Shown: piece by piece, positions 140-2,282 of the stretch
Layout of the letters: each line of letters opens with the position of its first letter
Numbering within the stretch: position 1 is the stretch's first letter
Assembly: GCA_002269645.1 (NCBI GenBank)
Contig: NIVC01003296.1
Span: forward strand, 41,900-105,899
DNA from: Macrostomum lignano
Lineage: Eukaryota
Direction of reading: 5' to 3'
DNA: 64,000 nt
Translations under genes and position numbers: made by a program
The notes under the pieces: model-generated
The model's database searches: none
What the model was told of the DNA's origin: nothing
Seen by the model: the letters and a program-made list of their open reading frames with translations, nothing else

Positions 140-2216
140 CAACTTTGAGCAGACTCTGCGTATCCTCAGTGGGCCGGTCGGGATACCGGAATTCCGGCCC
201 GCCATCGACAAGGCGCTGCCGAATTTGATCCAAAGCCAGGCTGGCATTGGCAGGGAATGAGCTGCGGGTTGGAGCATCAGTATAGAAGTATTATCTCGGT
301 GTGTATGACCAGAAATTCAAGGCCAAGAGTAAGATTACCTACCCACCTACCTACCTACCTAACTACCTACTTATCTATCTATCTATCTATCTATCTATCT
401 ATCTATCTATCTATCTATCTATCTATCTATCTATCTATCTATCTATCTATCTATCTATCTAATTTCAGTTTAAACTCATTATACTACTTACGATGCTCTT
501 ATCATTAAGCGGTATGGAACGGGTATTTTTGAATTGCGTGATACTGCTGCGAAAGGCCATATTGGGTAATCGCGGATCCAGGGACTCACTACATCACTCA
601 CTAAGGGCTAGGCAATTTCCTACAGAAAAACCTATTTAGTTTAGCATTTTTCAACGAACGCCAGGATCTGTCAATTGGAACGCACCCGAATTCGTCAAGA
701 TGAAGAACGTTCAATCGAAGCGAGCCGGCCTCTTCGAGCTTTGTCAAGTCTAACTTCTTTGACAGATCGAAACTTTTAGCTCCGGTTGTGGATTTGTCAA
801 GGCTGTGCCGCTCCTATAATGGTGAGGGGTGAGTCAGTTTGTTCGCAAAAAGCAGCAGACATGCCCGTTGCACTGACCCCTGAGCGCGCACATGCACACG
901 CTCACACAGGGTGTACAGCGGCCCCGAGTTTCCAATCGTCAGGCATGTACACCCTCTGCGCCTTGGGAGTTGACCCTCATGGGCGTGAATGGCACGATAA
1001 GCCCCCTGAAAGCCGGTTAGTGTCCATGCACACAAGCCCGAAAATGAATGCGGTCAGATACGTTCCTGCACGATTGAGAAGTTCGTGTTAACCGCGAGAA
1101 AAATCAATGATGTGAAAATGATGCACGATTTATAATCAATATAAAGTAGTAATATATATTATTATTTATAGTCACTCGCCTCGAACTGCGGCGCGTTCAT
1201 GTAACGCCAGGCGATGGCCAGGCCGTCGTCGTTGCCAGCGCCGCTGTCTCCAATGCCACCTGCTGGTTGCTGTTGCTGTTGTTGTTGTTGTGATTTTGTA
1301 CCCTCCTCAAGATCTGGCAGATTCTGGAAGTAAGTGAGTTGTAGTAGTAATAGTAGTAGAAGTAGTAGTAGTAGTGGTAGTAGTAATAGTAGTAGTAGTA
1401 GTAGTAGTAGTAGTAGTAGTAATAGTAGTAGAAGTAGTAGTAGTAGTAGTAGTAGTAATAGTAGTAGTAGTAGTAGTAGTAGTAGTAGTAATAGTAGTAG
1501 AAGTAGTAGTAGTAGTGGTAGTAGTAATAGTAGTAGAAGTAGTAGTAGTAGTGGTAGTAGTAGTAGTAGTAGTAGTAGTAGTAGTAGTAGTAGTAGTAGT
1601 AGTAGTAGTAGTAGTAGTAGTAGTAGTAGTAGTAGTAGTAGTAGTAGTAGTAGTAGTAGTAGTAGTAGTAGTAGTAGTAGTATCAAAGAGAACCCCGCAA
1701 TTACTCCCATAGGACATCTCACACCCCGCCACCCACCGCTAGCAGGTACTCCGAGTGCGCTTGGTTGGCGGCCACTAGCATCACGTGATGCCCATCCAGC
1801 AGGCTCTGGGCCAGGAAATAGCGACTCAACACGCCTGCATAGGCGCCTGTTGCGTCTTCGTCTGTTGTTGGGTTTTTTATTATGGGTGTCGTAGAAACAA
1901 TTGGCATATGATATTATCAGAGTGATGTTACAATAGGGATTTCATAGTCGCTGCCAGCTAATTAAAAAGGGATGCCAGTGTTTCCATCCTCACCGACAAC
2001 GCACAACCCGCCGACAGCCAGCCCGCCGCCAATCAATGCGTCGAGAGCGGCCACTCCGCAGCTGGTGACCGTCGCCTGCTGATTCTGCGCCACCAACTGC
2101 TGTTGCTTCTGCTGCTGTTGCTGCTGTCCACAGACGGGCCGGCCGCCGGGCACGCGAGGCCGAGGCCGCGAGATGCCGACGCCGGGGCCGCCTGGAGCAA
2201 CGCGACGAAAGCCAGA
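140..2216 (-). CDS. ELP4: Elongator complex protein 4 (partial; exons 2216-1994, 1861-1737, 1323-1180, 813-686, 261-140; continues past window start)
   Basis: Spliced translation gives SGFRR...TSCGVAALDALIGGGLAVGGLCVVDEDATGAYAGVLSRYFLAQSLLDGHHVMLVA...LAIAWRY...SFDLSKK...SLLKVG, matching ELP4/PAXNEB motifs (STG..ALD.LLGGGL.VG, KYFLAEG, IAWRY, ILRIG). Intron phases 1,0,0,2,1 are consistent. No in-frame ATG precedes the first exon. Confidence 0.88.
346..460 (+). repeat. (CTAC)n/(TATC)n microsatellite in ELP4 intron
   Basis: Direct reading of tetranucleotide runs. Confidence 0.95.
860..1000 (-). mobile_element. Truncated SINE copy (central core) in ELP4 intron
   Basis: Shares CCC.TGAGGG.CAAC.CCCAAGGC.CAG...GTGTACATGCCT.ACGAT...GGGCCGCTGTACAC with the full copy at 3801-4108. 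Confidence 0.75.
1340..1681 (+). repeat. (AGT)n microsatellite filling ELP4 intron 1324-1736
   Basis: About 110 trinucleotide units with AAT/AGA/GGT variants; source of the spurious poly-L/T/S/V ORFs. Confidence 0.97.
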
Positions 2217-2282
2217 CTGAAGAAATGGCAAGAAACACAAGACTATAGCTAGGCAATTGGACTGTCTTAACTTATCTTCTTC

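What the first reader, a model, noticed from the sequence alone, without database searches (positions are those of the whole stretch)
1994..2260. ELP4 seems to lack a genomic start codon and is in frame for a spliced-leader AUG
Seen: the first recognisable ELP4 exon begins after a strong acceptor (TGTGTTTCTTGCCATTTCTTCAG|, 2217/2216) with TCT GGC TTT CGT CGC in phase 0. There is no in-frame ATG upstream, and I found no convincing ATG exon between here and the ankyrin stop. Established: flatworm spliced leaders end in AUG, which can act as the initiator Met (shown in Schistosoma). Inference: SL addition gives M-S-G-F-R-R, closely resembling ELP4 N-termini such as yeast MSFRKR. The gene would then be translatable only after trans-splicing, tying Elongator tRNA modification to SL supply.
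Basis: partly seen in the sequence, partly recalled or inferred. Interest (0 to 1): 0.78.

Follow-up and report, generated by a model that had tools for sequence, protein, structure and literature searches.

The report
ELP4 start codon probably from spliced leader
In the flatworm Macrostomum lignano the ELP4 gene has no usable start codon in the genome and most likely borrows the AUG at the end of the trans-spliced leader, a trick already known in flatworms, so this is a probable new example and an annotation fix, not a new mechanism.

Summary
The window is the last 64 kb of Macrostomum lignano contig NIVC01003296.1. ELP4 lies on the minus strand. Its first coding exon (2216-1994) begins directly after a strong acceptor (TTTCTTCAG|) with TCT GGC TTT CGT CGC, in frame. 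Upstream in that frame are 36 sense codons without ATG, then TGA. The exon has no ATG in any frame, and the first in-frame genomic ATG is codon 103, past the nearly invariant LD..LGGG motif.

M. lignano has one 35-nt spliced leader (SL) ending in ATG. Its published trans-acceptor motif [T/C]TNCAG fits this site. SL joined to the exon gives a 408-aa ORF starting M-S-G-F-R-R. That matches the commonest ELP4 N-terminus in 111 homologs (M-x-S-F-R/K-R/K).

Both public models fail at this end. GenBank PAA52120.1 is "partial" and starts 42 nt inside the exon. The UniProt models start at an intronic ATG and lose the conserved motif.

I could reach no RNA data, so trans-splicing at 2216 is inferred, not shown. 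A weak-donor upstream exon or non-AUG initiation remains possible. SL-donated AUGs are established in Schistosoma (more than 40 cDNAs). The supposed link between Elongator and "SL supply" is overreach. Confidence in the SL-AUG reading is about 0.65, and interest is modest.

The parts
2217..2239 (-). Polypyrimidine tract and 3' splice acceptor TGTGTTTCTTGCCATTTCTTCAG|. This is the proposed SL trans-splice acceptor; its last six bases, CTTCAG, fit [T/C]TNCAG.
   Evidence: Sequence; motif from PMC8629364; identical in both paralogous loci L002 and L003.
1994..2216 (-). ELP4 coding exon 1: 223 nt, codons S1..V74 plus 1 nt. It has no ATG in any frame and encodes the conserved N-terminal S-x-F-R-R motif and the LD..LGGG motif.
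2325..2327 (-). First in-frame stop (TGA) upstream of exon 1. The 36 sense codons between it and the acceptor contain no ATG.
2172..2174 (-). Codon ATC (Ile15), where the GenBank CDS of PAA52120.1 (BOX15_Mlig018002g6, 'partial') begins. It lies 42 nt inside exon 1 and is not preceded by AG, so the model is 5'-truncated rather than ending at a splice site.
1905..1907 (-). Intronic ATG used as the start by the UniProt/ML2 ELP4 models (MPIVSTTPII...). Using it drops all of exon 1, including the conserved motif.
1737..1861 (-). ELP4 exon 2. It holds two out-of-frame ATGs, then the first in-frame genomic ATG at 1781-1779 (codon 103).
1180..1323 (-). ELP4 exon 3, followed by a GC-AG intron (donor GAG|GCGAGT).
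686..813 (-). ELP4 exon 4.
140..261 (-). ELP4 exon 5. Exons 6-8 lie beyond the window start on the same contig.
2273..2963 (-). 61-bp tandem array, 11.4 copies, ending 56 nt upstream of the acceptor. Each unit carries one ATG 16-17 nt before a consensus GTGAG donor. That donor is out of phase with ELP4, and the phase-0 frame has a TAG just before it.
   Evidence: copy number is 5.4 in L002 and 4.4 in L003.
4781..7019 (-). Upstream same-strand ankyrin-repeat gene, used as an internal control. It has the acceptor TTTCAG| (AG at 7019-7018), then 14 nt, then a genomic ATG at 7003-7001; its stop is at 4783-4781.

Best explanation
The ELP4 pre-mRNA of Macrostomum lignano is SL trans-spliced at the acceptor 2217|2216. 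The 35-nt spliced leader ends in AUG. Joined directly to TCU GGC UUU CGU CGC, that AUG becomes the initiator codon of a 408-aa ELP4 beginning M-S-G-F-R-R-V-A-P. The genome itself encodes no start codon for the full-length protein.

Shown:
- The gene is ELP4.
- The exon begins in phase 0 at a strong acceptor.
- No in-frame genomic ATG lies upstream.
- The species has an AUG-terminated SL.
- The joined ORF is intact across 8 exons.

Inferred:
- The SL is actually joined at this site.
- Ribosomes start at its AUG.
For: 1. Organism and SL: contig NIVC01003296.1 belongs to assembly GCA_002269645.1, which is M. lignano Mlig_3_7. The SL is CGGTCTCTTACTGCGAAGACTCAATTTATTGCATG, and 30-39% of genes are trans-spliced, with enrichment among conserved genes.
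2. Acceptor: CTTCAG| after a long pyrimidine tract fits the published trans-acceptor motif [T/C]TNCAG.
3. Frame: SL plus exons 1-8 gives one 408-aa ORF from the SL AUG. The next in-frame AUG is codon 103, after two out-of-frame AUGs. Starting there would delete the nearly invariant columns S52, G54, D59, G63-65, G69, D77 and G94.
4. Homologs: in 111 Met-starting ELP4 homologs with F in the aligned column, 63 have only 2-5 residues before the F, and the mode is 3. M-S-G-F would be exactly that. Examples are MSAFRRAAP and MSSSFRRAVP.
5. No phase-0 ATG mini-exon with a GT[A/G]AG donor exists in the 2.5 kb up to the ankyrin stop.
6. The RNA-seq-based GenBank model recovers all 7 internal junctions but no upstream exon in any of three copies, and is flagged 'partial'. 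The ab initio models had to use an intronic ATG.
7. Neighbouring genes show the usual layout of acceptor, then a few nt, then a genomic ATG: ankyrin 14 nt, katanin 17 nt, Med22 8 nt. ELP4 is therefore the exception, not the local norm.
8. Precedent: in S. mansoni the SL AUG is in frame in 28% of trans-spliced transcripts, and more than 40 cDNAs need it (PMC9851317). Macrostomum workers call the SL's final ATG a translation start codon (PMC10468722).
Against: - No SL-containing read, EST or cDNA for this junction could be examined.
- The GenBank transcript model begins 42 nt inside the exon, not at the acceptor. The published pipeline therefore did not cut this gene at an SL peak, unlike katanin and Med22, whose CDSs start right after the AG.
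- About 35% of M. lignano donors do not match GT[A/G]AG, so weak-donor candidates are not excluded. One example is ATGCGATTATCTCGCTGCGCC|GTGGAT at 3080-3060.
- The tandem array 56-750 nt upstream carries 11 consensus GTGAG donors. If they lie inside the primary transcript they could compete in cis with trans-splicing.
- The SL AUG context (U at -3, U at +4) is poor by Kozak rules (my own reading).
- The three paralogous copies are nearly identical around the site, with 2 differences in 279 nt, so there is no evolutionary test.
Confidence: 0.65

Rival explanations
1. An unannotated, cis-spliced 5' exon somewhere upstream supplies the ATG, perhaps with a few codons, and joins the 2216 acceptor in phase 0.
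For: - 30 phase-0 ATG...GT candidates exist between 2217 and 4800. Seven have GT[A/G], for example 3080-3060 (|GTGGAT) and 3055-3023 (|GTGGGT, the same hexamer as ELP4's own intron 2 donor).
- MCM6 in the same window clearly has upstream coding exon(s) beyond a repeat.
- 5' ends in this annotation are often truncated: the ankyrin CDS misses its real ATG in all three copies.
Against: - None of the candidates has GT[A/G]AG.
- The 3055-3023 donor is GTGGTT in both paralogs.
- The RNA-seq model found all 7 other junctions but no upstream junction in any of three copies.
- Homologs mostly place Met 2-5 residues before the F, so such an exon would encode little more than Met.
Confidence: 0.17
2. The mRNA is neither trans-spliced nor given an upstream exon. 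Translation starts at a near-cognate codon in the open frame upstream of 2216 (ATA, ATT or TTG), or at the first genomic AUG (codon 103), giving a truncated protein.
For: - The frame is open for 36 codons upstream and contains near-cognate codons.
- The annotated 5' end lies inside exon 1.
Against: - An unspliced transcript would have to ignore a near-ideal 3' splice site.
- Starting at M103 needs bypass of two out-of-frame AUGs and removes the nearly invariant LD..LGGG region.
- The residues encoded upstream (LCFLPFLQ) are just a translated pyrimidine tract and have no ELP4 counterpart.
Confidence: 0.1
3. The real start is the intronic ATG at 1907, as in the UniProt models A0A1I8H5S2 and A0A1I8GZJ4, used from an internal promoter.
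For: The ATG at 1907 reads in frame through the intron 1 acceptor into exon 2.
Against: - The RNA-based GenBank model splices exon 1 to exon 2.
- The intronic start discards the conserved N-terminal third of the RecA-like domain, and its 15 added residues have no homolog counterpart.
- It looks like an ab initio predictor forced to find an ATG.
Confidence: 0.03
4. This copy is a decaying duplicate (pseudogene) that lost its start.
For: M. lignano is a hidden polyploid with many duplicated genes.
Against: - All three copies keep an intact 8-exon ORF and an identical acceptor and first exon.
- No copy with a genomic ATG was found in the protein cluster.
Confidence: 0.03

Closest known systems
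Schistosoma mansoni mRNAs that use the SL 3'-terminal AUG as initiator Met (Cheng, Cohen, Ndegwa & Davis, J Biol Chem 2006; 281:733)
   Same: - Both are flatworms with an SL ending in AUG.
- The acceptor abuts the first sense codon in phase 0.
- No genomic in-frame AUG is available.
- More than 40 such cDNAs are reported (as quoted in PMC9851317).
   Different: - The species is a free-living macrostomorph and the gene is ELP4.
- Here the junction is inferred from DNA only, whereas the schistosome cases rest on cDNAs and translation assays.
SL trans-splicing in Macrostomum lignano (Wudarski et al. 2017, PMC5730564; Ustyantsev & Berezikov 2021, PMC8629364)
   Same: - Same organism and same assembly.
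- Same 35-nt SL.
- The acceptor fits [T/C]TNCAG.
- ELP4 is a conserved gene, the class enriched for trans-splicing.
   Different: - Neither paper discusses use of the SL ATG as a start codon; a search for 'ATG' or 'start codon' found only a general remark.
- This gene's GenBank model is not cut at the acceptor.
slORFs (ORFs created by SL addition; slORFfinder, PMC9851317)
   Same: The concept is identical: a start codon donated by the leader creates or completes the ORF.
   Different: slORFs are called from SL reads plus ribosome footprints, and neither is available here. M. lignano was not analysed in that paper.
ELP4 / PAXNEB (Pfam PF05625), Elongator subunit 4
   Same: - RecA-like domain with the LD..LGGG motif, IAWRY and the C-terminal HLPPD...LDF.
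- N-terminal S-F-R/K-R/K motif.
- A profile of the homologs hits yeast Elp4 structures 8ASV, 4EJS and 4A8J.
   Different: Poly-Q insertions are present. The initiator Met is not encoded next to the S-x-F motif in the genome.

Membership tests
ELP4 / PAXNEB (PF05625) | Significant match to the Pfam PAXNEB profile above the gathering score | tested here: met
   108.3 bits against a cut-off of 28, E = 5.7e-31, for exons 1-4. The annotated full product is flagged PF05625.
ELP4 / PAXNEB (PF05625) | Conserved family motifs (S..G....D...GGG...G, IAWRY, C-terminal HLPPD..LDF) and an intact ORF | tested here: met
   Nearly invariant columns are all present. An exact 8-exon spliced alignment of the 393-aa product runs to the stop codon.
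ELP4 / PAXNEB (PF05625) | Relationship to experimentally characterised Elp4 | tested here: met
   A profile of 150 homologs, including this protein, hits yeast Elp4 chains 8asv_G, 4ejs_A and 4a8j_A at E = 1e-46 to 1e-47. The single sequence alone found no PDB hit.
SL trans-spliced mRNA of M. lignano | SL sequence found on RNA joined to the acceptor | not testable with these tools
   No read or transcript data were reachable. The GenBank model starts 42 nt inside the exon.
SL trans-spliced mRNA of M. lignano | [quoted passage not shown] | tested here: met
   CTTCAG| at 2222-2217, preceded by a pyrimidine tract (motif).
SL trans-spliced mRNA of M. lignano | No cis donor upstream in the primary transcript paired with that acceptor | tested here: inconclusive
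   No productive phase-0 ATG exon with a consensus donor exists. However, the tandem array carries 11 GTGAG motifs, and the transcription start is unknown.
SL-AUG-initiated ORF (Cheng et al. 2006 class / slORF) | The species' SL ends in AUG | tested here: met
   From the literature: the SL ends ...TTATTGCATG (PMC8629364), and its final ATG is noted as a start codon (PMC10468722). No SL gene is present in the window.
SL-AUG-initiated ORF (Cheng et al. 2006 class / slORF) | SL AUG in frame with the conserved ORF, and no in-frame genomic AUG before the conserved domain | tested here: met
   A 408-aa ORF runs from the SL AUG, and the next in-frame AUG is codon 103. Upstream lie 36 ATG-free codons, then a stop.
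SL-AUG-initiated ORF (Cheng et al. 2006 class / slORF) | Translation shown to start at the SL AUG | not testable with these tools
   This needs ribosome profiling, N-terminal proteomics or a reporter assay.

The most novel reading that the evidence does not exclude
ELP4 expression in M. lignano may be gated at the splicing step. Only SL trans-splicing at 2216 yields a translatable mRNA. The copy-number-variable 61-bp array just upstream (4.4, 5.4 and 11.4 units in the three copies) offers one consensus GTGAG donor per unit. Cis-splicing from any of these to the same acceptor would give an out-of-frame, non-ELP4 mRNA. The array would then act as a tunable decoy competing with the SL.
Probability: 0.06. 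Interest if true: 0.55.

Novelty: new member of a known kind. Interest (0 to 1): 0.3.

Why it matters
- Annotation: if confirmed, this corrects three 'partial' GenBank ELP4 entries (PAA52120.1, PAA61214.1, PAA72125.1) and two mis-started UniProt entries for a BUSCO-type conserved gene.
- Systematic blind spot: in flatworm genomes, pipelines that trim the whole SL, or that demand a genomic ATG, will truncate or mis-start every gene that relies on the leader's AUG.
- Evolution: it would add a free-living, early-branching flatworm to a phenomenon documented experimentally mainly in Schistosoma. That supports the idea that the conserved terminal AUG of flatworm SLs is functionally used across the phylum.
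- Limit: it does not by itself reveal a new mechanism or a special link between Elongator and trans-splicing.

Tried and rejected
- A word-indexed protein search with the ELP4 exons found nothing, not even the 99-100% identical database entries. The exhaustive search later found them, so one search was a sensitivity failure and not evidence of absence.
- A single-sequence PDB search was empty; the profile search worked.
- Exact look-ups of four window ORFs failed because the annotated products differ at their 5' ends.
- The UniRef ankyrin protein has no contig on record.
- Searches for Mlig018002 or ELP4 in the supplements of the two M. lignano papers, and in the whole paper library, gave nothing.
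- I guessed that ELP4 homologs lacking the SF motif were parasitic flatworms, hoping to check their genomic starts. They turned out to be nematodes.
- The SL sequence and its 3' end plus GT are not in the window, so there is no local SL gene.
- Rfam and tRNA scans of the window were empty.
- I considered the ATG in each 61-bp repeat unit as a start. It lies 16-17 nt before the GTGAG donor (phase 1 or 2), and the phase-0 frame has TAG just before the donor, so it cannot feed the ELP4 frame.
- I considered a second in-exon acceptor, CTCCAG|G at about 2192. The SL AUG there would be out of frame, giving a 55-aa ORF.
- I considered reading the 'partial' GenBank flag as evidence in itself. I rejected this because the neighbouring ankyrin gene has a genuine genomic ATG yet is equally 5'-truncated in all three copies.
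- The paralog comparison is uninformative, with 2 differences in 279 nt.
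Full report
**Where we are.**
- A katanin ORF in the window matches a database protein whose only contig is NIVC01003296.1 (105,899 bp) of assembly GCA_002269645.1.
- Window position 1 is contig position 41,900, so the window is the last 64 kb of that contig.
- NIVC01000000 is the Mlig_3_7 assembly of the flatworm Macrostomum lignano (PMC5730564). UniRef and NCBI names of neighbouring proteins say the same.

**The observation.**
- On the minus strand the sequence reads ...tagtcttgtgtttcttgccatttcttcag|TCT GGC TTT CGT CGC GTT GCT CCA..., with the AG at 2218-2217 and the exon starting at 2216.
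- The exon runs to 1994, followed by GTGAGG.
- Spliced to the next exons, the product hits Pfam PAXNEB (ELP4) at 108 bits against a cut-off of 28.
- Upstream of 2216 the ELP4 frame stays open for 36 codons (DSQAIDISPEGKINEEDKLRQSNCLAIVLCFLPFLQ) with no ATG. It is then closed by TGA at 2327-2325.
- The 223-nt exon has no ATG in any frame. By itself this is unremarkable, because shuffles give P of about 0.13.
- Between the acceptor and the stop of the upstream ankyrin gene (4783-4781) I listed every ATG-initiated stretch that reaches a GT in phase 0.
  - There are 30, and none has the GT[A/G]AG donor.
  - That motif is found at 122,399 of 187,627 M. lignano donor regions (PMC8629364).

**Gene structure and public models.**
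- An exhaustive HMMER search found the species' own ELP4 entries.
  - PAA61214.1 and PAA72125.1 (Mlig018002g1, 392 aa) lie on two other contigs.
  - PAA52120.1 (Mlig018002g6, 393 aa) lies on this contig.
  - All are labelled 'partial'.
- All begin ISRPRPRV..., which is codon 15 of exon 1 (window 2174). They have no Met, and no AG precedes that point.
- An exact spliced alignment gives 8 coding exons. In window coordinates they are 2216/2174-1994, 1861-1737, 1323-1180 (GC-AG intron), 813-686 and 261-140. Three more lie beyond the window.
- Two UniProt models from the older ML2 annotation start MPIVSTTPII..., at an ATG inside intron 1 (window 1907). They therefore drop exon 1 altogether.
- So an RNA-seq-guided pipeline and an ab initio pipeline both failed to find a genomic start for the conserved N-terminus.

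**A caution about the 'partial' flag.**
- The flag alone proves nothing. The upstream ankyrin gene has a textbook layout: TTTCAG|, then 14 nt, then ATG at 7003.
- Even so, its GenBank CDS is also 5'-truncated, by 4, 10 and 11 codons in the three copies.
- By contrast, the katanin and Med22 CDSs begin at the first full codon after an acceptor AG.
- That is what the published TBONE procedure produces when it cuts a transcript at an SL-read peak.
- ELP4 was therefore not cut at an SL peak in the deposited annotation.

**Does the SL reading fit?**
- M. lignano has a single 35-nt leader, CGGTCTCTTACTGCGAAGACTCAATTTATTGCATG. An estimated 30-39% of genes receive it, preferentially conserved genes. 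The top motif at trans-acceptors is [T/C]TNCAG.
- The site here is CTTCAG| after a 20-nt pyrimidine-rich tract.
- Joining the SL to exon 1 in silico gives a single 408-aa ORF from the leader's AUG, starting MSGFRRVAPGGPGVGISRP....
- The next AUGs are two out-of-frame ones with 4-codon ORFs, then an in-frame AUG at codon 103 (window 1781-1779).
- Starting at codon 103 would remove S52, G54, D59, G63-G65, G69, D77 and G94. These are nine of the fourteen invariant or nearly invariant columns of the family alignment.

**N-terminal comparison.**
- I aligned the 149 best ELP4 homologs from the exhaustive search with the query.
- Our F3 falls in a column where 113 of 150 sequences have F. It is preceded by S (90) and S/T (87) and followed by R/Q/K and R/K.
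- Among 111 Met-starting homologs with that F, 63 have only 2-5 residues before it. The mode is 3 residues (26 sequences).
- M-S-G-F has exactly 3. Near-identical starts exist, such as MSAFRRAAP and MSSSFRRAVP.
- The codons right at the acceptor are clearly translated, and at most a handful of residues (most likely only Met) are missing from the genome.

**Rivals.**
- A cis-spliced 5' exon is the main alternative.
  - Weak-donor candidates exist at 3080-3060 (|GTGGAT) and 3055-3023 (|GTGGGT); the latter donor is GTGGTT in both paralogs.
  - About a third of donors in this species are non-consensus.
  - Against it, the RNA-based model captured all seven internal junctions in three copies but no eighth junction upstream.
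- Non-AUG initiation, or initiation at M103, would require ignoring a near-ideal acceptor or losing the conserved core.
- The intronic ATG of the UniProt models contradicts the RNA-based exon 1-exon 2 junction.
- Pseudogenisation is unlikely, because three intact copies survive.

**A complication.**
- The 61-bp tandem array at 2273-2963 ends 56 nt upstream of the acceptor. Each unit contains ATG, then 16-17 nt, then GTGAG.
- These donors cannot feed the ELP4 frame, because they are in phase 1 or 2 and a TAG lies in the phase-0 frame.
- If transcribed, however, they could compete in cis with the SL.
- Array length differs between the three copies: 11.4, 5.4 and 4.4 units.

**What could not be done.**
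- No reads, ESTs or transcript assemblies were reachable.
- Supplements and the literature do not mention Mlig018002.
- The three paralogous loci differ at 2 of 279 positions around the site, so they give no evolutionary signal.
- My attempt to find other flatworm ELP4 genes picked nematodes instead.

**Comparison with what is known.**
- That the flatworm SL's terminal AUG can serve as initiator Met was shown by Cheng et al. 2006. [quoted passage not shown]
- All flatworm SLs reported keep the terminal ATG (PMC12582326).
- Macrostomum genome papers already label the SL's final ATG a translation start codon (PMC10468722).
- The M. lignano trans-splicing study does not analyse SL-AUG use.
- This is therefore a probable new member of a known class, plus a concrete annotation correction, and not a new mechanism.
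- With a third or more of genes trans-spliced, nothing supports a special regulatory link between Elongator and 'SL supply'.

**Verdict.**
- Probabilities: SL-donated AUG 0.65; cis 5' exon about 0.17; non-AUG or downstream start about 0.10; others about 0.06.
- Interest is 0.3.

Noticed in passing
window 2273-2963 (-); L002 9572-9902; L003 9633-9902: A 61-bp tandem array lies directly upstream of the ELP4 acceptor. Copy number differs between the three paralogous loci (11.4, 5.4 and 4.4 units). Each unit contains one ATG 16-17 nt before a consensus GTGAG 5' splice-site motif.
   Followed up: partly
window 1174-1179 (-): ELP4 intron 3 is a GC-AG intron (TTCGAG|GCGAGT). It is required for the exact spliced alignment of the annotated protein.
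   Followed up: yes
window 1905-1907 (-): The UniProt ELP4 models of M. lignano (A0A1I8H5S2, A0A1I8GZJ4) start at an ATG inside intron 1. They lack the conserved LD..LGGG region, so their N-termini are probably mis-annotated.
   Followed up: yes
window 6971-7019 (-); L002 5500-5535; L003 5830-5884: The ankyrin-repeat gene has TTTCAG|, then 14 nt, then a genomic ATG (MGQAATK..., a possible N-myristoylation start). Its GenBank CDS nevertheless begins 4, 10 or 11 codons downstream in the three copies, so 5'-truncated models are common in this annotation.
   Followed up: yes
window 59245-59275 (+) and 51660-51685 (+): The katanin p60 and Med22 CDSs in GenBank begin without Met at the first full codon after an acceptor AG, which suggests experimentally cut SL sites. 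There the SL AUG would be out of frame and open a short upstream ORF overlapping the real ATG, for example ATG CCC ATC AAC CGC TGC CGA TGA for katanin.
   Followed up: partly
window 3830-4130, 887-997, 20637-20716, 39943-40030: A short dispersed repeat is present in 4 copies at 80-93% identity. One copy lies in the ankyrin-ELP4 spacer and one in ELP4 intron 3. Its 5' part looks tRNA-like by eye, but ARAGORN and Rfam find nothing.
   Followed up: partly
window 1337-1682, 347-461, 5759-6190: ELP4 and ankyrin introns contain very long microsatellites: (AGT/TAC)n of about 115 copies, (CTAT)n of about 29 copies and (CAGA)n of about 109 copies. All the coding exons are far more GC-rich than the introns.
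   Followed up: no
window 40096-40200 (+): The first recognisable MCM6 exon (..[29 protein letters not shown]..) begins after ctgatcag| in phase 2. The nearby ATG at 40124 is out of frame, so the true N-terminal exon(s) must lie further upstream, beyond a repeat copy. I did not locate them.
   Followed up: partly
tool behaviour: The word-indexed protein search returned no hit for a query that is 99-100% identical to three database entries. The cause is probably the poly-Q and low-complexity words. Negative results from that tool for Q-rich proteins should not be trusted.
   Followed up: yes
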